NCBI RefSeq assembly: GCF_947568905.1
Contig: NC_079165.1
Coordinates: 72,292,001 to 72,356,000 of the forward strand
DNA from: Ostrea edulis
Taxonomy: Eukaryota
Reading direction: 5' to 3'
Length of the DNA stretch: 64,000 bases
In this document: positions 9,353 through 46,434 of the stretch, one piece after another
Position numbering within the stretch: the stretch's first letter is position 1
How the letters are laid out: every line of letters begins with the position of its first letter
The notes under the pieces: model-generated
Database searches by the model: none
The model's input: the letters and a program-made list of their open reading frames with translations, nothing else
What the model was told of the DNA's origin: nothing
Position numbers and translations under genes: made by a program

Positions 9353-9364
9353 CCCCCCCCCCCC

Positions 9365-9395
<31 letters not shown>

Positions 9396-14200: not shown

Positions 14201-14296
14201 AATAGCGTGAACGCTCACAACTGACAAAATTAGGGATTGGTGCACATTCATTAACTATTGATACGAGCACATGTTATAAGCCAGTTATCCACAAAG

Positions 14297-14331
<35 letters not shown>

Positions 14332-15112
14332 TCACCTTGGCCCATACTTAAAGATTTTCCCTATATACGTTGATCCCTATTGTGTCCCCATCCTACCGCC
14401 AGGAGCTATGATTTTAACAAACTTGAATCTGCACTATGTCAGGAAGCTTATATGTAAATGTAAACTTCTTTGGCCCAATGTTTCTTGAGAAGAATATTTT
14501 TAAAGATTTTCGCTAGATATTTGTATGTAAAACTTTGATCCCCTATTGTGGCCGCACCCTACCCCCGAGGTCCATGATTTTTACAAACTTGAATCTGCAC
14601 TACACCAGGAAGATTTCATGCAAATATAAACTTTTCTAACCCAGTGGTTCTTGAGAAGAAGATTTTTAAAGATTTTCCCTATATATTTGTTTGTAAAACT
14701 TTGATCCCCTATTGTGGCCTCATCATTCCTCTGGGGTCCATGATCTGAACAAACTTGAATTTACTTTATACCAGGAAGCTTTCAGGTAAATCTCCACTCT
14801 TATGGCCTAGTGGTTCTTGGAAAGAAGACTTTTAAAGATTTCCCCTATATATTAGCATGTAAAAAAAAATTGATCCCCTATTGTGGTCCCAACCTACCCC
14901 CAGGGGTCATGTCAGATTTTAACAAACTTGAATCTCCACTATGCTAAGAAGTTTTCATGTAAATCCCAGCTTGTGATTATCTCCCCTTCTAAGGGGACAT
15001 GGTCTTTCATTTGAACAAACTTGAACCCCCTTCAGTCAAGGATGATTTGTTCCAAATTTGGTTAAAATTGGTCCATTGATTTGGAGAAGAAGTCGAAAGC
15101 TCAGGTGAGCTA
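14297..15112 (+). mobile_element. Helentron/HINE-type non-autonomous element carrying about 3.5 copies of a ~166-bp satellite-like unit (Cg170-like)
   Basis: SubTIR gctcacctgag (14321-14331) / ctcaggtgagc (15100-15110), palindrome ggcccatgggcc. acaaacttgaat recurs at 14417, 14583, 14749 and 14922 (spacing 166/166/173). The family name is recalled from oyster literature. Confidence 0.75.
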
Positions 15113-16180
15113 TTAAACAAGGAACAAAGCACACTGCAAATTATCTGTTGAAAATGAAATACGTTTTGTGTTTCACTGTTCTTTTTATGATAATTTATAA
15201 GCTTCGATTTGAATATTATGATATTTTTAACATAAGCATTGTACTGTGGTACTAATTCCATAAATAAAATTTTCAATATGTGTAATTACAATTGTACATG
15301 TTTTCTGCAGAGAAAAGAAACTCTTTGGTCTTTGAATGTATAGTACCAGAAGTCATTGTCTGCTACTGTTTATTATAATTGAGTTCCCGGTTCTTTGTCA
15401 TTTAACATAATTTTGACTGGTGGTGTTAATAAATGACCTGAATTTCATGATATGTTGCTAAATATTTGCCACTCCCGGTGACGGAGTTCGATTACACATT
15501 TACCCTCCATCATATTTACTTTCTGCGGACAAAGGGGAGTTACTCTTACATCGGTTTACGTTTATCGTCACTTATGACCAAAATAAGTTATGGTTTTTCT
15601 TTCAAGATGAAGTTCTGAGTATACTGAAGTTTGTAGAGTCTACAGGAAGCATTCTTATTTCAGAATTCAGAAGGTTATGAACATATCAGCCAAACCGGAA
15701 GGAATGTTATCAACTTCAATGAAAAGGTGCCAATTAACAACGTTCAGAGAACAGAATCACCAGTGATTTTATCTTTCAGACCGATGTTATTAATTTGAAA
15801 ATGTACTGGCAAATAAAATTTTCGCCGGTTTGATTCGAGTTTAAAATGAATTAGATCAAAGAGAATATTAATGTGGAAGATTTGTATATTTAATGATATA
15901 TCAATATTGTGGATGGAAGTTTTTACGGTAGATCTTTGAAGAAAAAAATCTTGGGAGCCTCGGTATATACAGACGACACACAGGGTTCATCCTGATACGG
16001 ATCCTTGCAAATTTTTACCTTTTTTATTTCAACGAAATGTTAAAATGGAAATATTACAAATGTATGGTGTTGCGGTATTTTATGATGAAATGTAAGCATT
16101 ATCTGTGATACGTGAAACTTTCTATGAATGCTCTCCCTTTGTTGTAACTATAAGTCGGTGTTGAACCAACCTCTGAAATC

Positions 16181-16542
16181 TTAAAGGGGCATTGGCTGTC
16201 ATTTTGTCATCAAAAATTGAATTCCATGAAAATTGCTCTATATTATACATTTCAGTAATAACACCGGTATTTAATAAAATTACATGTGTATTTCAAACAC
16301 AGCAGGCACATGAATGTGTAATTTTGGTAATTAAATAATTATGGTCTTGCAAGGCAATAATTCTTCCTTAAATATTTCTTTACATTAAAAGCGGTTATCT
16401 AAAGTTAATTTCAATAGGTTTCTCTTGTTTTTGTACAAAATAAATACCTTTATTAGTCATTAATATATATTCCTATGCTATTGAAAGATTTTGAGGGGGG
16501 AAAAAATGGTTGCCATCACTTTCACAACTAATGCCCTGTTAA
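16181..16542. mobile_element. Possible TTAA-flanked non-autonomous DNA transposon (Kolobok-like)
   Basis: ttaa|aggggcattgg ... ctaatgccctg|ttaa. The TIRs are degenerate. Confidence 0.35.
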
Positions 16543-19500
16543 GAAATGATTTCACATTGATCAATGTAATGCATTAAATATCAGTTGTGTAATTCTTCAC
16601 CTGACAAGGGAAATGTAAGAAATATGAATTTGAAGGCAAACTTACAGTGCATCCATTAGGAATAAATAACAGAACACCGTGCAAATGTATCGCAGGTTCA
16701 CTGATCAATATGGATTTACATGTATGTTTTCTATAAACAACACAATTGCAAAAGTTGGTTTATTACACTGTCTTGAATAATTGCGGGTTTATATGGTATG
16801 CCGAACATTTCTCAATTTATAAAATTATCCAGCACGTGCATTCACGTTTCATGTTTCCTCCACATGTTTACAGAACGATACTTTTTCTGTAGCCACTATC
16901 AGCGAGAAATTGAAAAAAAAAGAAAGAGAGATTATGCTATTGAGGTCTTGATTTCTTTTATTAATATTAATTTTTCTCTTAGAATTTTAATATTGATATC
17001 ATTACATCTTTGAAATTCTGGAAAAAGATGGAGAGCTGTCTATAACTTTCTGCGAGGGTAACACGTCTTATTGTAGAAATCACCTTCTGGGTCATCTGTA
17101 GTATTTTCCTATTTATTATCTTTTTCTTTGTTTCTGCCTTACAGGTAAAAACCCTCAATTGCAAAGTACTTGTAATCATTTTGATACCCCATCCTATGGA
17201 CAGGTCATATGAGAAACAGAGACGGAGAGCCTCGTTGGATGTTCTTTTTATTTTGTATACCCAGACCGTAATGTTCAATTTGTTGTGTGTGGTTTTTGTT
17301 TGTTTGATTGTTTTCTTCAGTTTCGACATTTTATTCGTCACGACCTCTAGCTTTGAGCCAAGTTCTGCGCCATCGCTTTGTGGGAGATAAGAAATGCTCC
17401 AACGCTGGATTTGTAAAAGTTATGAATTTTAGAAAACAAACACATTCATGTCTGCGGGTTTCCGATTGAACACAAACTGGAAGTTGATGTAAAATATCAG
17501 TGTGTAAATAATATTTTAATGGTAGTCATTGACATTTTACATTTGTACAGTTTTTGAGGACAAAAAGGATCTGGAAACAAGTGTTAATTCAACTTATAGT
17601 GTCCGAAACTCTTAAATTCTTCATCATTACGAAAATAATTATCAACCCATTGTTGAGTGGTCACAAATTAATTATGAATAGTAAACAAACTTAACAACTA
17701 AAATAAAAGTTATGAAAAAGTCCATGTCAAACCAAAACTCTTGTGAAACGTCGTTAGAATGTCACCTAGAGAAATCAATACCAAGTCTCCTCTTTTGTTT
17801 TTGCAAACTCGGAGGCTTTTAAAAAAAAACCACCTCAATTTCAATTTGCTGATATTGCCAGAACGTCTGATTTATTTCAATACACACGAGAACACCTAAA
17901 TTGTTTTTATTAATAATTAGAATTCGCCGTCAAGGGCCCGCGTGTTGATTACATTTCCATGCTCCATTTTCATTAGCATCCATCAAGGTGCAACTGATGT
18001 TACAAAGTTGTGAAAATATTCAAGGAACTTTTATTGGCGAATATACATCCCAGAGTTCTCAGATGATGCTTCCTTCTCTTTCCCGACTCGAAAACGTATT
18101 TCTCTCCCAGCGTGATGCAGATTTTCAATCATTTAGTATTTACCTAAAATACTGGCAGGTGCCATTACATTGCGCAGCTAATTAAAAATCTGTAGATCTC
18201 AAGAAAAATACATCGGGGTTCATGTTGTTTCAAGCATTAAGGGGACACGGCCCAGACCGAGGTTAATCGAACTCTTTTTTTTTTTCTTTTCATAGACATG
18301 ATGGAGAACCATATAGGTGTATCCAGTTTGCGTCAGCGGGTTTAGCTTACTAAATTTCACCAACATATGGAATGCCCAGCATTGTTACTGAAAGCAAGAA
18401 ACCCATTATTATGTAGTTTGAAAGCTCAAATTATATCTTCTCAGTTTTGAAAGGTTTAAATTTGAGAAATTCTGTAACTCCGGAAAGATTATGTATCAAA
18501 TAAGTTATACAAGCTCGTGGATAGCAATGTACGACACCCCGCGATGTCTTGGTGATTTGCTGGTTTTCATGCCAACTTTTCTTCAACTGTGTGACCGACC
18601 AGGGTAGTTTACGTCAAATGATATCCTCTTAATAAATTTAAGTAGCCAATGTATGCAGAAGAGCGGAAAGTTTTTGGTCCAAATTGTCTTGAAACAATTT
18701 TTTACAAGCTCCGTGTAATACCCGTCCTAGATTTTCTCAATTTCAGCGCGTGCCGATTTTCTATCAGACATCACGCCATATTGTGACAACATGCAAAAAA
18801 TACAAGTTTTTAATCCCTTTATTAATATCACAGACAATGCGACAAGATTATAATGATGCACAGTGACATAAATTAGACCTGATTTACACCAAGTCCAGAA
18901 CTATTGAACCTTGGAGGACAGTACTTGACGATGAACTAGAATTGACACTTTGGCGGATTCCTGAGAGTCTTCAGAAGCAGACGATTATTAACGTGATGGA
19001 ACTGCTGTAACGGCGACCAGAGACAACATAAAATCTGCTTTTCTATCGGTAATGACAGCCCGGGGGTCTAATTGGCAAATTCCGAGAGCTGCTAATAAGG
19101 AATCGGGTTCAGAACTGGATACGGATTCCTTTCCGGGTCATTAGTATGCAAATCTGTCCTGCAGCCATGTGACATCAAAATCCTCCCAACGGGAATCAAA
19201 TGAACTACAAAAAGATAAATACCTCATTACATTATAAAAATAAAAGTATAAAGGTCTCAACATACATTATAATTGTATTTGATTCGCTAAGAGTGGGTTC
19301 TTGAGAATCTTCACTTGATTTCGTTTTGGACAGTCAATCGGTACAATTAGTAGTACTGGTACCCATGACTACTTACTAAATGTAAAGGTATATTGCACTT
19401 TGTGTGGTGTTTAATTCTTTGGCTAGTTCCGATACAGCAAGATCCACTGGGTGGCTGAAGGTTACGACGTTCTAGCTAGCTAAGTTCACAATCAACAACT

Positions 19501-23400: not shown

Positions 23401-25012
23401 ATTTCAAAAATCAATCTGTCGATGTTTTCCCTCAGAACATTTATTAACCAGCATTATAATTAAATTCTGCTTGCGAGGTTGAAGGACATGGGAAAATTAC
23501 AGAAATCGAGTTGATCTCAAACCAACAGACATGTTCTGTCTTGTTCAATTTTCTACTGAAGTAGATTCCGATGTTTTCGAGATTATACAGTATCATAAGC
23601 GGAAATGGTAAAAACTAGCGCCAAGGCATAAAGTCAAGTACCCTTCCCTTCCAAAATACATGAAGGATAGCGTGTCCCCCTTCCTGCTGGGCGGGCGCGT
23701 TGGTTCCGGTTTATATGAAATGCAGGGTTGCATTGCATGGTATGGGTTACTCTAAACCTGAAACTGTTCGAGTTGTCTAAACAAAATCTGTTTAGCATTG
23801 TCGACAAATAAGCTTAACTCTAAACATCGTTTGAATGCCATAATTGATTTCACGTGCAAAAACATTTTATTTCAATGTGGATATGTAATAAGAGAACCAT
23901 ATCCCGGAGATTATTAAAACACGGAAAAATATCCATTAGTAATCCCTAGCTCTAAAACTTCCGATACCCCCTTTTTAAAGAACTCATTCTATGTCAATTC
24001 CAAGTCTTCCTTCAATAATCTTGATTTAGTTCACTAATTGCTTGAAAAAGAACATTTAAGTCCATTTCTGTTATTTCTGAAAATAAATAATTACATACAA
24101 TGGCAGTTCCGAGGTGGAAACCATTCAAAACTAACATTAAGAAATAGTTCAATTCTCGCTTAAAATAATGAAATACAGATTTACCTTGTGCCAAAGGATA
24201 AATAAGTTTTGGAACCATGGTGATTTGTTTAATTTTTCTCCACTTACAACTACAGAAACTTGCCCGGCATCTTAAGGAACAACATTACATCATTTCAGTA
24301 TAACGATCTAAAGACTTGCTGTGGGGTTTCTTAAATTGTGGCTACGAGGTTTCAAATAGACTGAAGACGTATATTTTCGAAAGAGAATAAATCAAAAGGC
24401 AGCGACTGTGATACTAAAACTGATTTGTTTACGGTGGTCAATAATTTTGATGTTATCACTCCTACATGTTAATAAAGTGTCACCTCGTCTTCGGGGACGC
24501 AACGGGGCGTTACGCAACCCCCTAACAAGGACACTAAGTACCGCTCCGATCCCCAAACCGAATTTACACTTGAATTATTCATACCAACTACCACCAAGCC
24601 TCCATTCCAATTAATGGCTTAACTTCGATTTAATTAGATGAAATAGTTCGTGATGTGAAAGAGGTTACTCATTACAGGTGCGATGACACACATAAGAGGT
24701 ATTAATTGAAGCTGTAGTAACTATTGTCATTCCCGTCAGTTTCTCTATTGATAGCTCTCACACATCACGGTCGGCTTTTGCATACTTTATAATCAATATG
24801 ATACTCTCAGTAGTAGTTAGGACCATGTATATTGCATCAAAATACTAAACAAGTATTCTAACCATATTTTCAAGCAAATAGAACCAAAGCAATATTGTAT
24901 GTACATGGTTATATATTTCATCTAATCAAAGAGTAAAGAGAGCTGGAAATTTGTAAAAACAAAAAATTGCCAGAATACAATTTATCGAAATCAATAGAGG
25001 TAGCACACTTAC

Positions 25013-27703
25013 CCCATAGACTGGATTAGGAACACTAAGACTGGTCTCTTCGTCCTTAATATCTGGGGCAAAGGTCACTTGGCTCTTGTGTCGTCTGTCG
25101 ACGTCTAGTGAATCTATATATCGGTGGTGATTCGGCACTTTCTTCATTGAACAAGGATCGTCTGCTCCTTCGATATATCGATTTGCGATTGATAACTTAT
25201 GATCTATCTCCTTGGTATCACTCGGAGAAGAGAATGTCTTTTCTACTTTCATTATTTCCCTTGGGTCCTTACGGTTATTGTCCAGCCATCGAATTATACA
25301 GATTGTCAAAATAATGAAGCCAGAGAGAGCTAGGGTCACGGTCACCAATACAATCACTATAGTAATGTTAGTTTGGCTGTTAGAGGCCAGAGATTCAGCA
25401 CCAGCAACCTTGACAAAGAACTCCATTCGACTTATTTGAAACACCAGTCCACGATCCCTAGCAACAGCCACAAGACTAAAAGTCTGACCAGAGTATTCTT
25501 CGAGTGCTTTCTTGGCAATTATATCACCCGTATCAATGTTGGCATAGAGAACTTCAGAAAAGTTTGTGCCCTCGATGCCATAAGTTATCTGACCGTTCTG
25601 TTCTTTGTCTGGGTCTCTAGCCCGCAAGCGTGCGATTATTGTTCCTGGTTTGATGTTTTGGGATACTAGGACCGAATTGTTAGTACTCGTTGGGAAGAGG
25701 AATCTTGGACTGTTGTCATTCTCATCAGCAACTGTAACTTTTACTCGAGCTGAGCTAGATTTTGGAGGTTGACCTTTGTCAGCAACAAAAACTGCGAATT
25801 CAAATATCTCCTGCGATTCTCGGTCTAATGACCTAGTTGTTAAGACGACACCATCTTTGGTGACATTAAACGGCTGAGTGCCACTCTCAACATAAAACTC
25901 AAACTCTTTATTCACTCCTTCATCAAGGTCTCCAGCCATGAGTCTACCAACAGTCGTTCCTGGTGGTTTTTGCTCCGAGACTTTGAATAGAAACATGTTT
26001 TCAAGAAAGGTTGGGGCAACATCGTTTTCGTCAATGACCTTGACCATCACAGTTGCGGTTGCAGACAGAGGTTCAGATCCTTTGTCAGATGCAATGATTT
26101 TGAATACGAAAGACGGAATGATTTCCCGGTCAAATGAAATCCCTGTCGTAACACTGCCTGTGACAGCGTCTATTGCCAGCTGATATTGCAAGGTCTCGTT
26201 ACTAGACAGGAGTTGATACCGCACTTCACCGTTTATACCCTCGTCTGCATCAGTTGCCTGTACTCGGATAACTTGAGCTCCTTTGCGATTATTTTCTGGA
26301 ATACTTCCTTGATATATATTTGAACTGAACTTTGGTGCATTGTCATTTGAGTCCAGAATGATAACTTTAAATGTATGTGTTGAGGTCAATGGAGGGTTCC
26401 CAGAGTCCGAGCACACAATTGTTATCGTATGATTTGGCGATGTTTCGCGGTCTAGAGGTTGCGCAACAGTAACTTTGTACTCATTGACTTCAAGTCTGTC
26501 TATTCTGAAGTACGAGTTATCTAGCGTGCACGTGACGTAACCATTCATGCCGGAATCGCTGTCAATGACAACAACATGAGCTATCGCGGCGTCAACGGAG
26601 GTATCCTCAGAAATCCGCGCAACATCAGACGTTGGAAGAAGAGTGACGTGTATTTCTGGAGGATTATTTCCGGAATCGATGACAGTGACCTTGACGGAGG
26701 TCTGGGTCGTTAGAGGCTGATCCCCTAAATCGCTAGCTTCTACGATCACTCTATAGGGGTTCCCATCATTATAAGGTAAAGTCTTTGCAACACTTAACTC
26801 ACCAGTAGTTTCATTTATTGCGAACAGTTGTTTAATGTTTTCGGACTGATGCGAACTTAGACGATACCTGATATCTGCATTTTTTCCAGTGTCAAGGTCG
26901 GTTGCGGACAAGGTGAGGATTACACTTCCGACAGCAATATCTTCCTTTACGGACACGTTGTAGATTGTGCTGCTGAGCATTGGCGCGTTGTCATTGACGT
27001 CCGTAATCCTGACATTCACGAGTAACTTTTCTGACCTTGGGGGATTGCCGCCGTCAGAGGCAATGACAATGAGGTTATAGGAGTCTTGAACTTCTCTATC
27101 AAGCGCTTTATCAACGACTAACTTCACAATGGATGTACCGTCTAAATTCTTGACAAAGCTAAGGGAAAAGGGTGAATTGGTTTGTTCTAACGTGTAGGAG
27201 TTTAGTGTGTAGTTAGGGCTAGTATCTGCATCTTTGGCACCGTCAATTGTAAAGGAGTTTCCGATGAGTGTGGACTCTGGGATGTCCAGTCGCATGGAAC
27301 TTCTTGGGAAAACAGGAGAATGATCATTGATGTCTTGTATGTAGATCGTCAACAGAATCTTAGTGAAAAAACTGCGTATGCTGGATTGTGCCGCGGCTTC
27401 CAAAGATATTTTACAAACTGTTGAAAAGCGACACACTTGTTCACGGTCGACTACCTGAGCAGTGTACAGATTACCTGAAGTCTGATTTATGGTGAACAAT
27501 GATACGTAACTATCCCCTGATAAAATACTGTAACGAAGGGTTCGGAAATCACTCGGAGTCATCTCTGACATCAGGTTAGAATCCATCGCAACGTTACCAA
27601 TGTAAGTTCCATTAGGAATCTCCTCATCGATGCTGTAGATAATTTCTCGTCCATGACAGGTAACAAGGAGGAAAATCGACATAAACACGGAACACCTCCA
27701 CAT
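25013..27703 (-). CDS. Protocadherin, large first coding exon: signal peptide, 7 cadherin (EC) repeats, TM, proximal cytoplasmic region (897 codons)
   Basis: The ORF has repeated xE / DRE / DxNDN / A-x-D-x-D cadherin motifs, an EC1 C-x5-C loop (VCRFSTVC) typical of protocadherins, and TM segment ITIVIVLVTVTLALSGFIILTICII. The whole ectodomain is in one exon. An in-frame phase-0 donor TATGGG|GTAAGT lies at 25012, so the last 28 codons of the 925-aa ORF are intronic. Confidence 0.95.
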
Positions 27704-36009: not shown

Positions 36010-36887
36010 TTATATATCGAATGAGACTGTCTTTTGTCCGCCTTTGGACTCAGAAAAGTCAGAAAGAAGAATTGAACCCTTCATCTGCTTGTCTACTGCT
36101 TCTGGCGCCATTTGATCTTTTGCGTCGTCATCATTCACCTGAAATAATGTATTCTTGGATTTGAAAGTAGTCTGAATCTTGCTCATGTCTGAAGTCCTTC
36201 TGCTAGAACTAGGTGGGGGGAAATTAAACGTCACACCTGGGAGTTGGTGGTCCGTTTTTCTCGCTAATGATTCATCACGTTTGTTGACATCTGATGCATT
36301 GTTTTCTTCATCAGACTTGGCACCTGTCTGTCCATTCGTAATAGTGTGTTTTTCTGCGATTGTTGCTTCTTCGACTGTTTTAAATGTCTCTCTGGTTTCC
36401 GTCTCCTTATTTCCGGTAACGGATTGGTTGACGACTGATTGCAATTCATTGTTTCTTTCAGAACTTTCTTGGAGCTCCCCCACACCTGAAGTTACTTGTG
36501 CACTCTCCACTTCTTCCTTGAATATTCCCTTCGGATCCTGTTCACTTTGTATTGTAATCGGCCAATTTCCTTCGACAGTTTGTTTTTTATTGAGTTTAGA
36601 GCTATATGCAAAATCATTTCTGATAGTGTGAGTCGAATCTGTCCTCACGATGAGAGTGTCTGCAGTTTTCAAAGTGTCTGGGAGATCTCTCTCCCCAACA
36701 TGTTCACAGAAATTGGTTTTCATAACACCCTGTTCCAAATCTTGTACATCTGAATTTGCCCTGCTGCTTTCAGAGGGACTGTCCGTCACTTCGTCCTCGC
36801 TCCTATTCTCGAGGGGATCTTTCTCTTCCTCAAAATGTTGGTTTATTTTGCAGATGCAGTTCATCTGTTCACAGTTGTTGCAGCACC
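36010..36887 (-). CDS. Exon 12 (terminal) of the 12-exon receptor: Cys cluster, then an acidic/Ser/Thr-rich low-complexity tail ending KTVSFDI*
   Basis: Lies within the 301-aa ORF 36010..36915. The phase-1 acceptor ttcgctattttgcatccAG|GG at 36888 is in frame with exon 11. Confidence 0.78.
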
Positions 36888-39800
36888 CTGGATGCAAAAT
36901 AGCGAACTCTTTCAATGTTACCGATTGCCATAATGAATGAATTTCAAACTACAAACTTGATGTTATATAATTTGCTTGCACTTCACTAGAGTGTTCCACA
37001 ATTAATGTACAGGCTGAGCTGTGCGTCTGCTGAATTAACATACACATGTAATTGATGGATGGTCAATAAAGGGCGCATTCCATATTTTTCTTATAACATA
37101 CAATGTATCAACAAAACCATAAATGAGATTTCAGCAAAGTAGAAAGTATATTACCACAGTAGAAATAAGAAGACCATTGCCAATTTATCAACATGAATAT
37201 GTATATATTTACGTATACGTACATATCGATATAGTTTAAGAAATATGGATAGTTTAGCAAATAATTTGTTTTGCTGTTACTATTGCTTTACATTCTAGTA
37301 GAACCTACTCCCGCAATTTTCCCCAGGTCTCTAATTGTCGTGCATATATCAATGTAGAGACAGAATAAAGGTCGGCAGGGGGCAGACACCAATATATAAG
37401 TCCGTACCCCATGGGTCAGTTTATATTACCAATATGCTTGAAATCCTTGTAGCAAAAAATGTTTACACCAATTTACCATACTAGTGCATCATGGCCGAAT
37501 CAAACTAAGACAAAAATATAGGCAGCGATTGCTTCGTCCCCAAACAATTGACATTTGGAAGTGAGACCCACAGGTCTTTTGGATATATTAACGTTAAAGA
37601 ACCTTCACTGCAACGGCTCTGGGTGCTAAACATAGGTCCAAGCTTTTGGAACTGGTGACGTCTCAGTATGAGTGAACAATTCTCGTCGGTACGACTAACC
37701 ATTATTAAAGCGGAATTTATATTTCCCCTCACAGCCGGTGTATATTTTTACTAATCACTTACGGTATATAGTGACCCGCGCACAGCAACGGTGTGTTTTC
37801 TGCTTTAATATGCTTCACATAAATGGATGAAGTTCTCATTCCTCGGTCACTGGTGTCTAATATATTTATATGTATATGATTTCATGATGAAAACTGTACG
37901 GTGAAATTTTGAGACAGTGCATGCATGATTTGGTAAAGAAATGATACTGACGACATACCTTCCAGTTAAAACTTAATTTGATACCACTTACCAGACACGG
38001 GGAGGTTAAACGGCATGATTCACAATGTGCGTGTCCTCATATTTGGACACGGAATGGAAAAATAAATAATGACATACAAAACACAGAGAAATTATCACTA
38101 CAATGTTGATACCCATTTCCGCTCCTACCCGAGGTTGCATCCACAACCTACGGAACCATATTTCGTAACAGAGCACGATCAGCACGCTAGATCGCTTGAC
38201 CATCTAGGCAAGTCAAAACCCTTGCTTTTTTATAGCAGTGGGAATTTTGATACACTGTCGCACGCTACACAGCTATATATATTTTTTATACATTTATCTC
38301 TTTGCATTGTGTTGTAGTGTATTCTCCTTACAGGAACAGACCCTGTAGATGTATAGTAGAGGACATACTCCTTACAGGAACAGACCCTGTAGATGTATAG
38401 TAGAGGACATACTCCTTACAGGAACAGACCCTGTAGATGTATAGTAGAGGACAGATTGCTTTTCTGATTAAATATGTCATGGTCATAACAGTTGATATTC
38501 TATAGAAGAACTGAAAGGTCAAAGTCAAAGCAATATTTCTTGTTGGTAAGGAGATCTTTAGTCATGGACTAATAATGAAAGTTGGGCATGCTCGGAGGAA
38601 TAGCATGGACTCCCTGGTCATAATGGACATCTTGCTATAACACGTAGATTTACATTTGCGCAAAACGGTTTCCTAACTCGATATTTCGTTAAGGTAGTTC
38701 ATAAAGAGAACTTTACGTTGTAGATGTCATGTTGAAACAATCATTAGAAAAATAAAAACTAATGACACGTCTTTACCCTCGAGTTTGTTGTCCAGGTCGG
38801 AGGTGACCTTGTCGTACTGATTTGGAGAAAGACATTCCGGATCTGGTGTGTCTGGAATGATTTTTCTCGTCCATCGACCTAAGACGGAAAAAAAAAGGAA
38901 AATAATACATATAGGCCAAGTTACCATAAAAGAAGTAGAGTTGGAGTACAAAGAGAGATAACTCCAAACCTTACCCGATACAACTGCACTCTCAATGTTT
39001 CTCTTATTTGAATGCTGTAATGGGAATATTCTCATGATTTTTTTCATCCAAGTTTGTGTTTTTTCTACTGCAGGTTGTCTTTGTTTCCATGATAGTATTC
39101 CTGTATCTTTCACAAGGGTTACATCTGAAGGGTTGCTGGGGGTGTGCTGAGATTGCCTCTCTAATAAGGAAGGGAAAGTGTAAATTATTAATACTACAGT
39201 GTACCAGCAAGCAAAACACTATGAAATGTATAAATATTAGATTCATTTAAGTAAGGAGCGATTCATCCCGACACCACTCCTTTTTTCTTTCTCTCTTTTA
39301 TAACAACTCACCACATGTTAACGATATAGAACCTGCAGTCTGTGTTGTTTTTCACTATTGTTTTATTTATTTTTGAACTACTGAATGTGTATAATACCTT
39401 CATCTTCATGTTTTACGGACTGCCTGAACCGTTTTTTGTGGCGGATGACTGTGTACAAAACGATGACAATGCAAACGATAAAAATGACGACACCGAGCAC
39501 TGATCCAACGATGACTCCTGTCTGGTCGTCGCTCGGAGTTGAGACGGCTGAAATATTGAAGGAAGACGATTTGTATCTGTGATATAGCATTATATTTCAT
39601 ATTTTGAAACGAGTTTGTAATTGAGTTAGTCAAGTAGTTAAGGCTATCCATCGCAACTGGGAGTTCCCGGGTTCCATTTCCCATTCCCGACAGCCACTTC
39701 AAATCTAAGACACTTAACAGGGTTCTTTCACCGATCACCCGGCATCAGAAGCCAGTCACGGGTCTCTCGGATGACTTTATGACTATAAAGAATCCTCACT

Positions 39801-42800
39801 TCTACGACATTGAGCGCCATGCATATACCTGTAGGTCAAAATTTGTGGCACTTCATCTTCGTCTTGTGACGTCTAAATTCACGCACGAGACAATAACAAA
39901 AAAGTTTGTAATCGAGTAAGCTCCCTTGTATTGCGATGTTTTATTTACTTACGACAGACTCCTGCAAAAGAAAAAAGGGAATATATTATAAAACAACCGA
40001 CATTCAGGCACTATGTATGTGTATGCTTTCGAGAAAAGACTGTCTTTCTTACCTGATTTCTGTAGTAGCAGAGTGCCAGATCCGTCTGTCTGTCGGTTTG
40101 TTGCTGTTTGACTCGGCTCACAGCTTCCGGCACTATCGCTCGCCTGAACTACAGACTCATTTTGGACGAACGCCTGATAATACCATTTTTCATGAAAAGA
40201 ACCCTTAATATTTTCAAAATCAATATTTATCATGTTGTATATTGGCAAAAGCATCATTCAGATACTTACAAAACACGTAAAGCGATGCGTTGTCAAGGTA
40301 TCAATGTTCTCGTCGGCATTGTAAACAATGGTAAAGTAATGCTGACTCACATTGTCCATCTTTGTGTGAATGCAATTTACTTCACCACCTTCTAAAATTC
40401 AGGATAAAAAATGACAACAAGTTACAAACTAAATATTCGCCCATTTCTGGACGATAAATATAAATATATACTTTTAAAGAGGAACTAAAGCGTGCTTGAT
40501 GGAAAATGCGTATTAGAATGATATGAAAAGGCGAAGATAACGAACAGTGATTAATCTCATAACCCCTATAAAGAAAAGAAAATTGAGAGTATGGCAAACA
40601 CGGACACCTGGACATACCAGAGGTGCGACCAAGTGCCTCGAAGGAGTAAGCGTCCCCTGTCGACCGGTCACACTCGCCGTGAGCCCTACATCTCGATCGG
40701 GTAAACAGAGTTACATGTATCCAGGGGCGGATCCAGGAATTGCAGTTACGGGGGGCGCCACTTTATGAGGAAATGGGTCCAGGGGGAAGCCCTCGAGGGG
40801 GTCCAGGGGGCGAAGCTCCTGGATTTTATGGGGCTTTAAATATTTCTCCTATTTAGTCATTTGTACTATTTTTTATCATTTTAATAAGGTGAAATTAATA
40901 AAATGACCCAAATTTTAAGGGTTTTTTGGAAAAAATTAAGTTCTCCCAATAAATTAATTCAAGAAATCAAAAGATTTTGTCATTTATTTCTCCGGAAGTG
41001 GAAGAAATTATTGCTTCTTTTGTCGTTTAGTACATTTTTCTAAACAAGATACCACGATTTACCTTAAATTTGAAAATTTTAGGGGGGGGGGCGCCTGCTG
41101 CGCCCCCCTCTAAATCCACCACTGGTATCCGTAATCGAAATCAGTGTGTAAAGAACGGCCTCATTTGGTATGAAACATGTCAGACAGCATTTTACCCAAC
41201 GACAGGTTTTATTGATAAATTACATCGTTATAACGACCTTAGAATTTGCGAAATGATGACTTTAAACGAGACTGTTGAAACCCCTGTAGCATCAACTTAT
41301 TTTTAAGTAGCCTCTCTCTGTATAAATTCTGATCATACGCAGAACAAGCTGTTGCGTATAGAATCAGCTGAGAGATATAAACACCATATGCAGGTGATAG
41401 TGGATTTTACCAGAGAATGCTTGTGTTTTGTTGCACTTTTGGTAGTTGAACTTCACGGTGGTCCCACAGACACTTAACGATGAGTCTGCTCTACAGGAAG
41501 TGGTGTTGAGACTCTGATGCTCATATTTCCATAATCCCTGGAGAAGACTTGGACATTCTTTATAAACAGATAGCGAGGAAACTGAAAGGAAAGAATATTC
41601 ATAAAAGGACAGCGTCGAGCAAACGTACCCGCTTTACAGAGGAATAGTTACCTGTTTTCACTAAGACATGGAATTCCTCCGCCGAAGGATTCGTTGTAGG
41701 ACTACAGCTTGTTTGGATGCTGGAAGATAGAGGTGTTGTCGCAAGTTGCACTCGATACCCATTTACAGTATCTAGATCTGAGAATACAATTTGATATATT
41801 CTGAGAATAGAATTTCATACATGAACAAGATAACTAAAACAGTTTAAGAATATTTTGATCCATTCTTTCTGAGTGGCTGAGATTCAATAAACTAGAAAAA
41901 ATAGAATGTTATGTCCACCTCCACGAGCCTTCGAGGTGAATATAACATTTGATTTTTCCAATATCCAACAAAAACAAATGGGTAATTTCCAAATTGATAT
42001 GATTGTCTATTATTTTTTATCGCCCAATAAAAACTTTCTAATGACTTCCTACTAGGTCTATAATACTCTAGCTGTAAACAAAAATGACCGACCAAGAATC
42101 TTTTTGTTGGCTTTAGCGTCTTCAGTGTTTTAAATCATTCAATCATATAGTGAAATAATAATTGATATTTCTGAGGTCAATACAATGTTTTATTTTAGCT
42201 TGGAGAGCTCGGTCAACATTGTATTTCTCGGGTAACTAGACCATAATACTGAACTAAAAAATGTCAAGTATTGTAGAGGATTCAGTTGAAATATTTCATG
42301 ACACAGTATTATATGACATTTCATTTTCTATATTTGTGAAATCCTGCACGTACCATTGTAAACAACGTAGGAATAGGAAAAATCGGTCAGCTTGGTCCAT
42401 CGGATACATCGCATCGCCCCGAATGTGAACCCTGTGCCCGCAACAGTCTGATCTGCACTATTAGGTGTTAGGAACAAATAATATATATACATGTACATTG
42501 TCTTGACTGATACTCTTTGATGTTATGGGGGGGGGGGGTTACCGTAATTTGTGAACATTCAGAGAACATCGGTAAGAAAGTGCATTGTAAGTACAAGATG
42601 ATTACAATTCACGTTGATTAGGGCGAAAATCAAGGCCGTGTAAGAAACCTGATAAATATCTTCAGTGTGTAGTTTCCATACTATGTGTGAATTTCAATAT
42701 AGATGTACTCACTGGAAAAGAAGTATATTTCCGGAGGAATTCTGACACGTCCATGAATGAAAACTAGTAATATTCCATCCGGATAAAATAGATATGGCGT

Positions 42801-43025
42801 CTATGACAATCTCTCCATCCCCAAATTCGCTGCTAAACCAAGATCCGCCCCAATCAGATGGAAATATACAGCTACAGCCTAATGCAATGATATGACATTT
42901 AAAGATATCTTCAGTTCAGATTTCCAAATGTTATACTCATCTTCTGTAAATTTTCCTATTTCCGACTCACCAATATTTTGAATGCCTCCCAACAATACGA
43001 GATTAGAAAGGAATAGTAATTTCAT
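36010..43025 (-). CDS. 12-exon type-I membrane protein, 729 aa: signal peptide, two Cys-rich repeats (DUF7042-like, from memory), TM, ~400-aa Ser/Glu/Thr-rich tail
   Basis: Exons 43025-42971, 42878-42713, 42457-42354, 41777-41652, 41581-41411, 40391-40270, 40173-40053, 39961-39953, 39547-39398, 39160-38975, 38878-38777, 36887-36010. All introns are GT-AG with matching phases. Total 2190 nt = 730 codons with no internal stop. Confidence 0.8.
38120..38215 (-). mobile_element. Truncated tRNA-derived SINE-like head, in intron 11 of the 12-exon gene
   Basis: gacttgcctagatggtcaagcgatctagcg, a close match to the copy at about 10540-10600. Confidence 0.5.
38324..38453. repeat. Perfect 44-bp tandem repeat, about 3 copies
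   Basis: ctccttacaggaacagaccctgtagatgtatagtagaggacata at 38324, 38368 and 38412. Confidence 0.95.
38777..38878 (-). CDS. Exon 11 of the 12-exon receptor (RWTRKIIPDTPDPEC...DNKLE)
   Basis: Acceptor tttttttttccgtcttAG|GT, donor GAGG|GTAAAG. 102 nt, phase 1 to 1. Confidence 0.78.
38975..39160 (-). CDS. Exon 10 of the 12-exon receptor (cytoplasmic)
   Basis: Acceptor ctttcccttccttattAG|AG, donor TCGG|GTAAGG. 186 nt, phase 1 to 1. Confidence 0.78.
39398..39547 (-). CDS. Exon 9 of the 12-exon receptor: transmembrane exon (GVIVGSVLGVVIFIVCIVIVLYTVI-RHKKR)
   Basis: Acceptor tcttccttcaatatttcAG|CC, donor GAAG|GTATTA. Hydrophobic helix followed by basic stop-transfer residues. Confidence 0.85.
39649..39828 (-). 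pseudogene. Decayed sushi/CCP-like pseudo-exon inside the 12-exon gene
   Basis: Intact phase-1 acceptor ttttgacctacAG|GT. The 180-nt frame reads IC...*KNPVKC..GNGKWNPGTPSCD, matching the C..G.W....P.C end of a CCP module. In-frame TGA at 39730-39728. The expected donor reads G|GATAGC instead of G|GT. Confidence 0.6.
39953..39961 (-). CDS. Exon 8 of the 12-exon receptor: 9-nt microexon (G-V-C)
   Basis: ttcccttttttcttttgcAG|GAGTCTGTC|GTAAGT. Near-ideal acceptor and donor 9 nt apart, phase 1 to 1. Confidence 0.7.
40053..40173 (-). CDS. Exon 7 of the 12-exon receptor (AFVQNESVVQASDSAGSCEPSQT...GTLLLQKS)
   Basis: Acceptor tattatcAG|GCG (an in-frame alternative lies at 40143), donor TCAG|GTAAGA. 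121 nt, phase 0 to 1. Confidence 0.75.
40270..40391 (-). CDS. Exon 6 of the 12-exon receptor (GGEVNCIHTK...VYNADENIDTLTTHRFTCF)
   Basis: Acceptor gaattttAG|AA, donor TTT|GTAAGT. 122 nt, phase 1 to 0. An internal in-frame GTGAGT donor lies at 40350. Confidence 0.78.
40575..41320 (-). mobile_element. Penelope-like retroelement 3' remnant in intron 5 of the 12-exon gene, interrupted by a MITE
   Basis: Minus strand reads RLLKNKLMLQGFQQSRLKSSFRKF*GRYND...LGKMLSDMFH, resembling the LxxKLxxQG(F/Y)xxxRLxxxFxKF RT C-terminus of Penelope-like elements. Premature stops are present. Confidence 0.6.
40722..41124 (-). mobile_element. MITE with 5-bp TSD GTATC, nested in the Penelope-like remnant
   Basis: Termini caggggcggatcc...aaatccaccactg. 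GTATC at 40717-40721 and 41125-41129. Inverted relative to the copy at 9799-10041. Confidence 0.8.
41411..41581 (-). CDS. Exon 5 of the 12-exon receptor (ECPSLLQGLWKY...SVCGTTVKFNYQKCNKTQAFS)
   Basis: Acceptor ttctttcctttcAG|TT, donor TCTG|GTAAAA. 171 nt, phase 1 to 1. Confidence 0.8.
41652..41777 (-). CDS. Exon 4 of the 12-exon receptor (LDTVNGYRVQLATT...TSCSPTTNPSAEEFHVLVKT)
   Basis: Acceptor ttgtattctcAG|AT (an in-frame alternative lies at 41771), donor ACAG|GTAACT. 126 nt, phase 1 to 1. Confidence 0.75.
42354..42457 (-). CDS. Exon 3 of the 12-exon receptor (ADQTVAGTGFTFGAMRCIRWTKLTDFSYSYVVYN)
   Basis: Acceptor cctaatAG|T, donor AATG|GTACGT. 104 nt, phase 2 to 1. Confidence 0.75.
42713..42878 (-). 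CDS. Exon 2 of the 12-exon receptor (CSCIFPSDWGGSWFSS...WTCQNSSGNILLF)
   Basis: Acceptor gcattAG|GC, donor CCA|GTGAGT. 166 nt, phase 1 to 2. Confidence 0.8.
42971..43025 (-). CDS. Exon 1 of the 12-exon receptor: signal peptide MKLLFLSNLVLLGGIQNI
   Basis: ATG at 43025, hydrophobic leader, donor ATTG|GTGAGT (phase 1). Confidence 0.75.
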
Positions 43026-43994: not shown

Positions 43995-45608
43995 TCAGTC
44001 ATATTCATCATAATGACCTATGTTGTGGACCCTTCGCGTACGTCTTGGAGTCAGATTCCGGACGGTATCGAAGAGATCCTGTTTCGGTTTCTTCTCAGGC
44101 ATATCCGGTTTCTTCTTTCTCGTGCAGCAGTGTATCACTAAACAAATCATTGATGTAATGAAAGCGCTTCCTCCGGCCGCGGCAATCATCATGTAGATCG
44201 TGTTCATTGAGAACACACCCTCCGTAGGTTTGGGTGTTGTTTTGACGTCTGCTGGTGGTTTTGGTGTGGTTTTGGGGGTTGTCGTCTGCTTGACAGTTGT
44301 GGTGGTTGTTGGTTTTGCCGTGGTTGTGACAGGGGTTGTAGTAGTTGTGGTGGTAGGAGTTGTAGTGGTAGGAGTTGTGGTGGTGGTGGTGGTCGGTGTG
44401 GTGGTGGTGGTTGTGGTACTAGTGGTGGTAGTCGGAGTAGTGGTGGTGGTGGTACTGGTGGTGGTAGTGGTAGTAGTTGTGGTAGGTATATCGGTCACCG
44501 TCACCCTCACACTCTCTTCGTTCTGTTTTTTCACATTGTTGACCTGAACTTTCCACATCCCGTCATCATCGACGTCCAAGGAATTTATTGTTAGTACACC
44601 TTTGTCGGAGACGTGATACTTTGAGTGATTGTAGTTGTAATATTTCAATTTTGTGCCATCGGGCTTTATCCAAATGACATCAGGAAACGGATCTCCGCCA
44701 AACGTGCATGACATGTTCAGTAAGGTGTGATATTTCCCGGTCTGTGAACTTGATGTGCACCTGACAGATGCAGGCACACAGATGAGCTTGGAAGATGGAA
44801 CATTGACAATGGACTGGTATTTCAGAGAATCCGGTGAACTACACGTTACGGATTCAGGTATTGGACTGGGCAGTACTTTAACCCATTCTAATGCACAGGT
44901 ACATCTCCAGTTGTTGTTGTCCAAACGCACAGTCTTTATTTTATGTAATTCCATCACACTTGTATTTGATAGCTGTGTAAACGAGTTTCCAGATATATCT
45001 ATGTAACCTAGGTTAGGACTTAGTTTGGTGAAGCTCCAGTCTAAGCGTCGAAGTTTGTTTCCGTGAAGGTCCAGAGTCTTCAGCATTGAAAGACTGTTAA
45101 ACAGTCGCTTATCCAGTACATCCAAATGCATTTCTGCCAGATATAATTCCGTTAGTTGCGTCAAAACGTTGAAAGCGGTCAAAGCTATTTCAGTTCCATT
45201 ATTTCCAGACAAATGCAACACCTTCAGCTTAGATAACCCCTTAAAAGTGTTTTCCGAAATTTCACCAATTTCATTGAAAGAGAGGTCTAACAAAATCAAT
45301 GTGTGCGGTAGAGAACCATCTGTAATGGACTCGACATCGCAGAACGCCATATAAAGTCTTTTCAAATTGGGTAAAGATGAGAAATAAGAATTTTCGACTG
45401 ATGCAATTTTGTTTCTGGATGCAAAAGTACCACTGAGTTGTAAAGCAGTGATTTTTGACGGTAATCCTGACGGGAATCTGGTCATTTCCTGTTTACAGAT
45501 TGCAGAAATATTGGAACACTGGCAGCTTGAGGGACAAGCGCATTCAACAGGTACCCAGTTTACTACAATAAGTACACATATAATCACGAGAGCGCTATTA
45601 TTTTCCAT
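43995..45608 (-). CDS. Intronless LRR-Ig receptor A (537 aa): signal peptide, LRRNT, 7 LRR, LRRCT, I-set-like Ig, Thr-rich stalk, TM, short tail
   Basis: ATG at 45608 (the track starts at the GTG upstream). CPSSCQC cap, LxxLxLxxN repeats, NNWRCTCALEW cap, Ig with MSC/VIW strands, poly-Thr/Pro stalk, TM IYMMIAAAGGSAFITSMICLVI. Confidence 0.93.
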   Translation of the reverse strand: MENNSALVIICVLIVVNWVPVECACPSSCQCSNISAICKQEMTRFPSGLPSKITALQLSGTFASRNKIASVENSYFSSLPNLKRLYMAFCDVESITDGSLPHTLILLDLSFNEIGEISENTFKGLSKLKVLHLSGNNGTEIALTAFNVLTQLTELYLAEMHLDVLDKRLFNSLSMLKTLDLHGNKLRRLDWSFTKLSPNLGYIDISGNSFTQLSNTSVMELHKIKTVRLDNNNWRCTCALEWVKVLPSPIPESVTCSSPDSLKYQSIVNVPSSKLICVPASVRCTSSSQTGKYHTLLNMSCTFGGDPFPDVIWIKPDGTKLKYYNYNHSKYHVSDKGVLTINSLDVDDDGMWKVQVNNVKKQNEESVRVTVTDIPTTTTTTTTTSTTTTTTPTTTTSTTTTTTTPTTTTTTTPTTTTPTTTTTTTPVTTTAKPTTTTTVKQTTTPKTTPKPPADVKTTPKPTEGVFSMNTIYMMIAAAGGSAFITSMICLVIHCCTRKKKPDMPEKKPKQDLFDTVRNLTPRRTRRVHNIGHYDEYD

Positions 45609-46434
45609 CACTGTTTGCTCAATCCTCTGTTGTGCTGAGATGTTTCCGTATCGTTCTCCGTTACCGTCTCTGAAAATACAATTTTGTCTCTACCTCCCGT
45701 CTGTCGTCTTTTTAAAATTTGATATCGCAGTCTCGTTTTAAACCGTTGGAGGTACCTGCTAAAGGTTGTTTAAACCTAATTGATGGGAGTTATTCGTGAT
45801 TCTGGTTGCCTATTCACCGATGGTTTTGCTTTTGATATTTCTCATAATACGTCATGTCAAAATTAATGAATTTACATGAACGAAACAGAGGAATGTCGGA
45901 TTAGAAGGCTTTCAGAGAACAACGTCATGAATCAAACCGTGTATATCTTAATGTCTAGAATAAATCATATTAGAATTTAATGTCTTCAGAAACACAATAG
46001 AGTGGATAGAAAAGTTAAGAGAAAGTTCCGTTGCGTCCAATCACAATGCCGTATGTATTAAATGGCGGGTCCTTTGAGTGATAGCAATACAATTACCCAG
46101 TAATCTAGCAGTTTCTATATAAAATTCTCCCCTAGAAAGCAGCTACTTACTTTCCGATCTTTCATATACTTGTTTTAATTTTCCCTAAAATGGACTTGTT
46201 GATTTTTATAATTAATTTCCAATGATTTTGCATGAATACTATGATATGTTGACGTAGAGGGCAGGTCCTCTTGGATGAGAATTCAGAGATTAATTCAGTT
46301 CGTAAAATAGCTCTCAAATAAACCAACGAATGAATCGTCTAGTGACTTTGTCGAAAAGAGGTATATTTTACATAGAATTTTATTTTGGGTGATTATTTCC
46401 CATCTTTATATATATAAATATATATACACTGTGT

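What the first reader, a model, noticed from the sequence alone, without database searches (positions are those of the whole stretch)
36010..43025. Hidden 12-exon orphan receptor: tandem Cys-rich repeats, TM and a ~400-aa disordered tail
Only fragments appear in the ORF track, but 12 GT-AG exons join in phase to a stop-free 729-aa protein: MKLLFLSNLVLLGGIQNIG-CSCIFPSDWGGSW...VVYNDLD...ECPSLLQGLWKY...IVYNADENID...-TM-tail. The ectodomain is two copies of one module (C-x(0-2)-P...G-x-W start and a VYN(A)D motif in both). It resembles what I recall as the DUF7042 repeat of uncharacterised mollusc and arthropod proteins. I know of no function for such a receptor. It sits between a protocadherin and two LRR-Ig receptors, which suggests a recognition or adhesion role (inference).
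Basis: partly seen in the sequence, partly recalled or inferred. Interest (0 to 1): 0.7.

Follow-up and report, generated by a model that had tools for sequence, protein, structure and literature searches.

The report
Truncated-in-RefSeq oyster DUF7042 membrane protein
This flat-oyster gene most likely encodes a cell-surface protein with two small beta-barrel domains, one membrane helix and a long floppy tail. It belongs to a mollusc-wide family of unknown function (Pfam DUF7042), so it is not an orphan, and the public annotation cuts it short at a conserved 9-base exon.

Summary
It has a signal peptide, one TM helix at residues 302-323 and a 406-aa hydrophilic tail.

It is not an orphan. The window is Ostrea edulis chromosome C2. 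RefSeq annotates the locus as a 205-aa protein (LOC125678673). That protein is identical to model residues 89-291 and scores above the Pfam DUF7042 cut-off.

Exons 2-7 recur, with the same order and phases and near-identical sizes, in at least 16 tandem units of a giant paralogue on the same chromosome. A profile search found 206 relatives; every one that carries a name is from a mollusc.

A confident AlphaFold model of a paralogue shows two 8-stranded lipocalin-like barrels. Sequence does not show that the two modules are copies of each other.

RefSeq ends the protein by reading through the donor of a conserved 9-nt micro-exon. At least four other models from oysters and other bivalves end the same way. 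Homologues, including an uninterrupted Magallana Logan contig that I read as mRNA, continue from that cysteine into a stalk and TM helix.

No RNA reads were available. The tail exons rest on reading frame, phase and codon usage only. The function is unknown; I infer ligand binding by the barrels. This is a new member of a known kind.

The parts
42971..43025 (-). Exon 1: start codon and signal peptide (residues 1-19), phase-1 donor
   Evidence: First ATG of the open frame, with a GTGAGT donor. The paralogue P0023 has its first intron at the same place, just before the Cys-x-x-Pro motif. RefSeq does not use this exon.
42713..42878 (-). Exon 2: start of barrel 1 (DUF7043/7044-like)
   Evidence: Weak DUF7044 hit, 16.7 bits, E 0.0084. 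It has 26 paralogous exons at 33-51% identity in the own genome. RefSeq does not use this exon.
42354..42457 (-). Exon 3: barrel 1, middle
   Evidence: The 104-nt size is conserved in 14 of the 15 paralogue units where this exon was found. RefSeq P0027 starts at the internal Met in this exon.
41652..41777 (-). Exon 4: end of barrel 1
   Evidence: Junctions 3/4 and 4/5 are present in P0027. Paralogue exons are listed.
41411..41581 (-). Exon 5: start of barrel 2 (DUF7042)
   Evidence: It has 25 paralogous exons. Alignment A1 shows four invariant Cys. The profile of this exon finds 206 proteins.
40270..40391 (-). Exon 6: barrel 2, middle
   Evidence: Present in P0027. Paralogue exons of 107-116 nt.
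40053..40173 (-). Exon 7: end of barrel 2
   Evidence: The 121-nt size is conserved in 14 of the 15 paralogue units where this exon was found. DUF7042 covers P0027 residues 71-188, which are model residues 159-276.
39953..39961 (-). Exon 8: 9-nt micro-exon (Gly-Val-Cys plus the first base of the next codon)
   Evidence: RefSeq uses the acceptor, because P0027 ends Gly-Val-Cys-Arg-Lys-stop by reading through the donor. A 9-nt micro-exon of the same phase sits in the 82.16 Mb paralogue and in loci L048 and L049 of two other species. TM-bearing homologues have Cys then Pro at this point.
39940..39947 (-). Read-through stop codon (39945-39947) overlapping an AATAAA (39940-39945), just after the micro-exon donor
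   Evidence: Read directly from the sequence. This could give a short secreted isoform by intronic polyadenylation. Untested.
39398..39547 (-). Exon 9: Pro-rich stalk, TM helix (residues 302-323), basic stop-transfer stretch
   Evidence: Hydropathy and TM-type Pfam hits. The stalk and TM start resemble those of the Sinanodonta homologue P0080. The 82.16 Mb paralogue has an equivalent exon ending in the same phase.
38975..39160 (-). Exon 10: cytoplasmic tail
   Evidence: In phase with GT-AG. Codon score +0.3 against -36.5 and -11.2 in the other frames, about the 95th percentile of intron controls. No paralogue. This is the weakest exon of the model.
38777..38878 (-). Exon 11: cytoplasmic tail
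   Evidence: In phase. Codon score +15.8, above all 2000 intron controls.
36010..36887 (-). Exon 12: 291 codons of acidic, Ser/Thr-rich tail, plus the stop
   Evidence: It lies in a 312-codon open frame. Codon score +74.6; the highest intron control was -66. The frame is intact in a second individual despite 18 substitutions. It has no paralogue and no other homologue.
40410..41409 (.). High-copy repeat filling most of intron 5
   Evidence: Contig depth is 10^3 to 10^6 times that of the flanks in all four runs.

Best explanation
The locus is an intact member of the molluscan DUF7042 family and most likely encodes a type I single-pass membrane glycoprotein.

Its order of parts is:
- a signal peptide;
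- barrel 1, which is DUF7043/7044-like and carries a lipocalin-style Gly-x-Trp at the first strand;
- barrel 2, which is DUF7042;
- a Cys supplied by a conserved 9-nt micro-exon;
- a short Pro/Ser/Thr stalk;
- the TM helix;
- a disordered acidic tail of about 400 aa.

Shown: the exon phases, the family membership of barrel 2, the conserved exon structure, and the two-barrel fold predicted for a paralogue.

Inferred: the RefSeq 205-aa product is a truncation caused by failure to splice the micro-exon. The two disulfide-braced 8-stranded barrels would bind a small hydrophobic or lipid-bearing ligand at the cell surface, as the second barrel of APCDD1 does. The unconserved tail would act as a flexible docking region.

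The same transcript may also yield a secreted two-barrel form when the micro-exon donor is not used.
For: - The 12 exons join in phase to 729 aa.
- P0027 (RefSeq XP_056009428.1, Ostrea edulis) is 100% identical to model residues 89-291. It scores 36.2 bits on DUF7042 against a cut-off of 27.
- The exon 2-7 set repeats at least 16 times, with the same order and phases and near-identical sizes, at C2:98.96-99.02 Mb. Thirteen of those units rebuild without a stop and align end to end with the window's ectodomain.
- 50 of 73 family proteins of 230 aa or more have a TM helix; in most it lies near residue 300-330.
- A Magallana Logan contig of 3370 nt carries an uninterrupted 616-aa ORF that runs barrel 2, Val-Cys-Pro, stalk, TM.
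- The O. edulis paralogue at 82.16 Mb has the same 9-nt micro-exon, an in-phase TM exon and an acidic tail exon, none of which its RefSeq model uses.
- The AlphaFold model of paralogue P0023 has pLDDT 93.8 and pTM 0.88, with two beta-barrels.
- VIA-align matches lipocalin-like barrels, nitrobindin and APCDD1 at Z 5-8.
- Codon usage supports exons 9, 11 and 12.
Against: - No RNA evidence was available: all runs are DNA-like.
- No transcript-derived ORF of this gene exists in the protein collection.
- RefSeq stops after the micro-exon, and an AATAAA lies right there, so a short form may be the main or only product.
- The tail has no homologue anywhere. It shows more substitutions than its flanks between two individuals, 2.1% against 0.9%.
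- Exon 10 is only marginally coding-like.
- The structural matches are middling by the tool's own standard, and no ligand pocket was examined.
- The fold was predicted for a paralogue only 34% identical, not for this protein.
Confidence: 0.55

Rival explanations
1. The gene makes only, or mainly, a short secreted protein: signal peptide, two barrels, then Cys-Arg-Lys-stop. Transcription would end at the AATAAA just after the micro-exon. The TM and tail exons would be unused relics or rarely used alternatives.
For: RefSeq ends there. The stop codon and the AATAAA overlap at 39940-39947. Five gene models in at least four bivalve species end by the same read-through within 2-8 codons. No TM-containing product of this gene is on record.
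Against: A 9-nt exon with a strong acceptor and a GTAAGT donor is conserved in paralogues and in other species, and in-phase exons follow it. Most family proteins have a TM helix. An uninterrupted Magallana contig, read here as mRNA, runs straight through the equivalent point into a TM helix. The TM and tail exons are open and coding-like. Short-read aligners often miss 9-nt exons (my own knowledge), which would produce exactly these truncated models.
Confidence: 0.2
2. The locus is a decaying paralogue on its way to being a pseudogene. The reading frame survives by chance or recent origin, and no functional protein is made.
For: A sushi-like stretch with an in-frame stop lies in intron 8. The gene is only about 34% identical to its nearest paralogue. 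RefSeq found only a fragment. Exon 12 differs more than its flanks between two individuals, with changes at all codon positions.
Against: All 12 exons are open over 2190 nt of AT-rich DNA. The 12 family cysteines are kept. The splice sites are canonical. Every exon prefers the model frame. Exon 12 has no indel or stop in the second individual.
Confidence: 0.1
3. The ectodomain gene (exons 1-9) and the long exon-12 ORF are two separate genes. The tail of the true receptor would then be short.
For: The 1.9-kb intron 11 is full of repeats. Exons 10-12 have no comparative support. All the tail exons are phase 1-1, so in-phase joining is weak evidence on its own.
Against: The 82.16 Mb paralogue also has an acidic tail exon in phase after its TM exon. 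Long unconserved tails are the rule in the family. The word search recovered only one 284-aa Logan ORF, called on a contig colinear with the genome, and no annotated protein of 160-509 aa containing exon 12.
Confidence: 0.1

Closest known systems
Pfam DUF7042 (PF23069), with DUF7043/7044/7045 (PF23070, PF23071, PF23073): uncharacterised metazoan extracellular domains
   Same: Barrel 2 of this gene passes the DUF7042 cut-off. Homologues score 33-84 bits. Module 1 gives repeated sub-threshold DUF7043/7044 hits at the same position. The Atlas places the paralogue beside molluscan and arthropod DUF7042/7043/7044 clusters.
   Different: Module 1 does not reach either cut-off. The arthropod proteins are about 610 aa and carry more domains. 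This gene adds a 9-nt micro-exon, a TM helix and a unique 406-aa tail. No paper in the library mentions any of these DUFs, so the family gives no function.
APCDD1 (WNT inhibitor; PMC10193966)
   Same: APCDD1 is a single-pass membrane glycoprotein whose ectodomain is two beta-barrels; its second barrel holds a lipid. Its barrel aligns with barrel 2 of the paralogue model at Z 5.9 over 116 residues.
   Different: There is no sequence similarity: no APCDDC Pfam hit and no PDB sequence hit in the ectodomain. The Z score is no higher than for many unrelated barrels. APCDD1 has a short cytoplasmic tail. This is an analogy of architecture, not membership.
Lipocalin / calycin 8-stranded barrels
   Same: Both predicted barrels match lipocalin-like and nitrobindin-type barrels at Z 5-8. 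Barrel 1 matches true lipocalins at Z 5-6: VDE, tear lipocalin, Per a 4 and tick histamine-binding protein. The family consensus at the first strand, Gly-x-Trp-Tyr, recalls the first conserved lipocalin motif; that comparison is from my own knowledge and is only a lead.
   Different: No lipocalin Pfam model is hit. This protein has six disulfide-forming Cys pairs, two barrels in tandem and membrane anchorage.
Giant multi-unit paralogue at C2:98.96-99.02 Mb, and EGF-containing relatives such as Pecten XP_033729075.1
   Same: They share the same six-exon two-barrel unit with phase 1-1 borders. The giant paralogue also ends in a TM exon and a tail.
   Different: The giant paralogue has 16 or more units against one here. 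The Pecten protein has two units separated by EGF repeats (11 EGF stretches in the Pfam scan).

Membership tests
Pfam DUF7042 (PF23069) | Score at or above the curated gathering cut-off of 27 bits | tested here: met
   P0027, the RefSeq product of this locus and identical to model residues 89-291, scores 36.2 bits, E 6.9e-9, over profile positions 2-116 of 123. Single exons alone gave no hit.
Pfam DUF7043 / DUF7044 (PF23070 / PF23071) | Score at or above the 27-bit cut-off on module 1 | tested here: inconclusive
   Window exon 2 scores 16.7 bits on DUF7044. Homologues score 13-23 bits at the same N-terminal position. The module-1 profile against a true DUF7043 protein of this genome scores 8.5 bits, reached by about 1 of 1000 shuffles. 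All of these are below threshold.
Type I single-pass membrane protein | N-terminal signal peptide, one TM helix, and basic residues on the cytoplasmic side | tested here: met
   The N-terminus is hydrophobic and ends in small residues just before the first Cys. There is a single Kyte-Doolittle peak at 302-323, followed by a Lys/Arg-rich stretch. This is in silico only, and it depends on the unverified junctions 8/9 and 1/2.
Lipocalin / calycin superfamily | Eight-stranded up-and-down barrel | tested here: inconclusive
   Predicted for the 34%-identical paralogue P0023 (pLDDT 93.8). VIA-align gives Z 5-8.1, which the tool calls middling.
Lipocalin / calycin superfamily | Match to a lipocalin sequence model | tested here: not met
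   No lipocalin-type Pfam family was listed among the hits. The profile search against PDB sequences found nothing in the ectodomain.
APCDD1 | Sequence homology to the APCDD1 ectodomain | tested here: not met
   No APCDDC hit. No PDB sequence hit to 8e0r or 8e0p. The only link is a one-barrel structural match at Z 5.9.
Sushi / CCP-containing DUF7042 proteins | An intact CCP exon after the micro-exon | tested here: not met
   The stretch 39649-39828 has an in-frame stop and no GT donor. Its two pieces hit no Pfam family. Its likeness to the first CCP exons of L048 and L049 is weak: 24-34 of 2000 shuffles reach it.

The most novel reading that the evidence does not exclude
The conserved 9-nt micro-exon is a regulated switch. 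When it is spliced, the two-barrel ectodomain is anchored through a TM helix and a long tail. When its donor is ignored, a stop follows within 2-8 codons, and here an overlapping AATAAA, releasing a soluble decoy. This would resemble the membrane/secreted choice of immunoglobulin heavy chains. The family would then be a mollusc-expanded set of surface and soluble lipocalin-like ligand binders, running from one unit to 16 or more per protein.
Probability: 0.15. Interest if true: 0.55.

Novelty: new member of a known kind. Interest (0 to 1): 0.35.

Why it matters
For annotation: a 9-nt exon appears to break gene models of this family in several bivalve genomes. A membrane protein becomes a short 'uncharacterized protein', and in two species a second 'Sushi' gene appears right behind it. 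Micro-exon-aware re-annotation would repair a whole family.

For biology: DUF7042/7043/7044 have no literature. A confident two-barrel, lipocalin-like model with an APCDD1-like layout gives a first testable idea, namely binding of a lipid or small ligand at the cell surface. The family is heavily expanded in molluscs and also present in arthropods.

The gene itself is one ordinary, divergent member.

Tried and rejected
**RNA support.** The look-up of sequencing runs found five runs, none on record as RNA. Read laying on 36810-42809 showed only contigs colinear with the genome and no exon-exon joints. The 6000-letter limit left out exon 1, the first 69 bases of exon 2 and most of exon 12.

**Transcript-derived ORFs.**
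- The word search with exon 12 found one Logan ORF, whose contig is unspliced.
- The word search with P0027 found only P0027 itself.
- The look-up of encoding contigs has no record for P0027.

**Internal duplication.** Two hhalign runs were not significant.

**Other family and structure searches.**
- Pfam on single exons gave almost nothing.
- The own-genome DUF7044 search did not list this locus.
- Foldseek against the PDB gave only TM-scores near 0.2, to TbpB and fHbp.
- The word search with the P0080 ectodomain reached only three unionid mussel proteins.

**Literature.** Searches for the DUF names and for the locus or protein accession gave no paper.

**Earlier findings by words.** Nothing.

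- The Atlas was busy for the tail.
I reran it from locus references only.
- The joined 729-aa model has no reference, so I sent it to no search or fold tool. I used exon references, P0027 and the paralogue P0023 instead, and handled the joined model only in local scripts.
Full report
**What is in the sequence.**
The gene lies on the minus strand. I located the exon borders from the sequence and joined them in a script. The result is twelve exons, each with AG before it and GT after it.

The eighth exon is only 9 nt (39961-39953). Leaving it out also keeps the frame and gives 727 aa.

The product has these features:
- a hydrophobic N-terminus;
- 13 Cys and 6 N-glycosylation sequons in a 282-aa ectodomain;
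- one hydrophobic helix at residues 302-323, followed by a basic stretch;
- a 406-aa hydrophilic, mildly acidic tail.

A codon-usage log-odds score was trained on the three large ORFs of the window and set against the gene's own introns. It is highest in the model frame for every exon. Exon 12 scores +74.6, where the highest intron control was -66. Exon 11 scores +15.8, above all controls. Exon 10 scores only +0.3, about the 95th percentile.

**Whose genome, and what is annotated.**
A profile of exon 5 and its paralogues (A1) was searched against 1.84 billion representative proteins. It found 206 proteins at E up to 0.001.

One hit, P0027, is 100% identical to model residues 89-291. It is RefSeq XP_056009428.1, 'uncharacterized protein LOC125678673' of Ostrea edulis. 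It lies on a contig whose length equals that of C2, the contig that holds the window.

P0027 has 205 aa. It starts at an internal Met in exon 3 and uses junctions 3/4, 4/5, 5/6, 6/7 and 7/8. It then reads through the micro-exon's GTAAGT donor, ending Cys-Arg-Lys-stop.

The signal peptide, exon 2, the TM exon and the tail are not annotated.

**Not an orphan.**
Searched exon by exon in the own genome, exons 2 and 5 each have about 25 paralogous copies at 29-51% identity, all on C2.

At C2:98.96-99.02 Mb, the exon 2-7 set recurs at least 16 times in the same order. The gaps between some units are as short as 236-450 bp. Exon sizes are almost fixed (184, 104, about 130, 177, about 110 and 121 nt), and the unit borders are phase 1-1.

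Thirteen units rebuild without a stop and align end to end with the window's ectodomain, with all family Cys in place. The array ends in a TM exon and a tail ORF. It looks like one giant membrane protein.

Every relative that carries a name is molluscan. The bivalves include Ostrea, Magallana, Crassostrea, Saccostrea, Pinctada, Pecten, Argopecten, Mytilus, Mya, Mactra, Solemya, Tegillarca and unionid mussels. The gastropods are Haliotis and Nucella.

The tail exons have no paralogue and no other homologue.

**Family.**
P0027 passes the Pfam DUF7042 cut-off: 36.2 bits against 27. Homologues score 33-84 bits over the same module.

Module 1 gives only sub-threshold DUF7043/7044 hits: 16.7 bits on window exon 2 and 13-23 bits in homologues. 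A module-1 profile barely scores on a true DUF7043 protein of this genome.

The Atlas puts the paralogue P0023 next to a molluscan DUF7042 cluster and to arthropod DUF7042/7043/7044 clusters.

Module 1 and module 2 profiles do not match each other: E 0.13 with 14 sequences and E 0.22 with 43. Their intron positions and phases also differ.

**Fold.**
The joined model has no reference, so I did not send it to any search or fold tool. Instead I folded the O. edulis paralogue P0023, which consists of a signal peptide and one complete unit, together with 45 relatives (A2).

The model has pLDDT 93.8 and pTM 0.88. It shows two beta-rich domains, at residues 25-155 and 162-292.

- Foldseek against the PDB gave only weak two-lobe barrel proteins, TbpB and fHbp, with TM-scores of about 0.2.
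- VIA-align against 48,161 chains matched barrel 2 to YLR301w (Z 8.1), Tp0751 (Z 8.0), lipocalin-like proteins, nitrobindin and mouse APCDD1 (Z 5.9).
- It matched barrel 1 to true lipocalins at Z 5-6. The tool itself rates such Z values as middling.
- A sequence profile finds no solved relative in the ectodomain.

APCDD1 is a single-pass membrane protein with two beta-barrels, the second of which holds a lipid (PMC10193966). That is the same layout, but I found no sign of common descent.

**The micro-exon.**
Several lines support it as a real exon followed by a TM exon.

- TM-bearing homologues have Cys then Pro exactly where the micro-exon joins exon 9. The stalk that follows in the Sinanodonta protein P0080 resembles the start of exon 9.
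- A Magallana Logan contig of 3370 nt carries an uninterrupted 616-aa ORF that runs barrel 2, Val-Cys-Pro, stalk, TM. Because genes of this family have introns, I read this contig as spliced mRNA.
- The O. edulis paralogue at 82.16 Mb has a 9-nt exon of the same phase with a GTAAGT donor. It is followed by an in-phase exon encoding Pro, a Thr-rich stalk, a TM helix and a basic stretch, and then by an acidic tail exon. Its RefSeq model P0023 again ends by reading through that donor.
- Three further models end the same way: C. virginica XP_078325739.1, P0122 and P0119. In the loci of the last two, the 9-nt exon is visible. A separately annotated 'Sushi' gene begins 0.3-1.4 kb downstream on the same strand. 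The first sushi exon seen behind the micro-exon (before that gene's annotated start in L048) is in phase with it.
- 50 of 73 family proteins of 230 aa or more have a TM helix; in most it lies near residue 300-330.

I infer that these short models are truncations at a micro-exon that read aligners miss.

The alternative cannot be excluded here. In the window the read-through stop (39945-39947) overlaps an AATAAA (39940-39945). A short secreted isoform made by intronic polyadenylation is therefore possible.

**What could not be shown.**
No RNA evidence was available. The five runs that hold the stretch behave as DNA. Their contigs run colinear through the introns, and the only joints lie in the high-copy repeat of intron 5.

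The one Logan ORF matching exon 12 sits on a contig colinear with 37251-33998. Compared with the window, that contig has 18 substitutions in the exon-12 coding sequence (2.1%) against 0.9% in the flanks. There is no indel and no stop, and the changes fall at all three codon positions. The frame is kept, but constraint on the tail looks weak.

Junctions 1/2, 2/3 and 8/9 to 11/12 therefore rest on phase, splice signals, codon usage and paralogue structure.

**Verdict.**
- 'Orphan' is wrong, and 'two copies of one module' is unproven.
- The best reading is a DUF7042-family type I membrane protein with two lipocalin-like barrels and a unique disordered tail. RefSeq under-annotates it because of a conserved 9-nt exon.
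- The function is unknown. Ligand binding by the barrels is my inference.
- Its neighbours are a cadherin-repeat gene and two LRR-Ig genes. That says little about its role.

Noticed in passing
G000:C2:98958300-99020400 (loci L033-L040), minus strand: At least 16 tandem copies of the six-exon two-barrel unit. The gaps between some units are as short as 236-450 bp, and all unit borders are phase 1-1. The array ends in a TM exon near 98958931 and a Pro/Lys-rich tail ORF. It is probably one giant membrane protein of more than 4000 aa. Two micro-exon-like 9-mers lie between units, at 98997523 and 98965374.
   Followed up: partly
window 39649-39828, minus strand (intron 8): A sushi/CCP-like stretch, in phase with the micro-exon, starts Cys-x-Ala-Leu and ends Trp-x-x-Gly-Thr-Pro-Ser-Cys. 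It has an in-frame TGA and no GT donor. In two other bivalve genomes (L048, L049) intact sushi exons follow the same micro-exon in phase. This fits the loss of a CCP domain here. The similarity is weak: 24-34 of 2000 shuffles reach it, and the pieces have no Pfam hit.
   Followed up: partly
L048 (GCA_026571515.2) 3001-18971 and L049 (GCA_021730395.1) 3001-12507: A short DUF7042 gene model that ends by micro-exon read-through is followed within 0.3-1.4 kb, on the same strand, by a 'Sushi' gene model of 2050 or 965 aa. The first sushi exon seen after the micro-exon is in phase with it. The two models are probably one gene split by the annotation.
   Followed up: partly
G000:C2:82161300-82171700 (L041, L042), plus strand: In the P0023 paralogue locus, the TM exon (local 12840-13119) and an acidic tail exon (from local 13255) are not used by RefSeq. 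About 0.4 kb beyond the tail ORF's stop, a 30-nt tandem repeat encodes a 10-residue periodic peptide (local 14044-14610). A second family gene starts at local 15272.
   Followed up: partly
window 40410-41409: A very high-copy repeat fills most of intron 5, with contig depth up to 10^6 in DNA runs. It has many internal joints and G/C homopolymer runs. It looks like a compound of short mobile elements.
   Followed up: no
G000:C1:93290294-93292498 (L008 448-2652): An intronless 734-aa ORF with DUF7043 (66.6 bits) and DUF7044 (39.6 bits) hits, a Cys-rich ShK-like stretch (by eye; no Pfam model matched it) and a C-terminal hydrophobic segment. It belongs to a different branch of the same domain group.
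   Followed up: partly
window 36013-36887: Between the window and a Logan contig from another individual, exon 12 carries 18 substitutions (2.1%). The flanking intron and 3' region carry about 0.9%. There is no indel in the exon.
   Followed up: partly
window 24926-27703, 43995-45611 and 53531-55123, minus strand: The neighbours are confirmed: a 925-aa ORF with seven cadherin repeats, and two intronless LRR plus Ig ORFs of 538 and 530 aa.
   Followed up: partly
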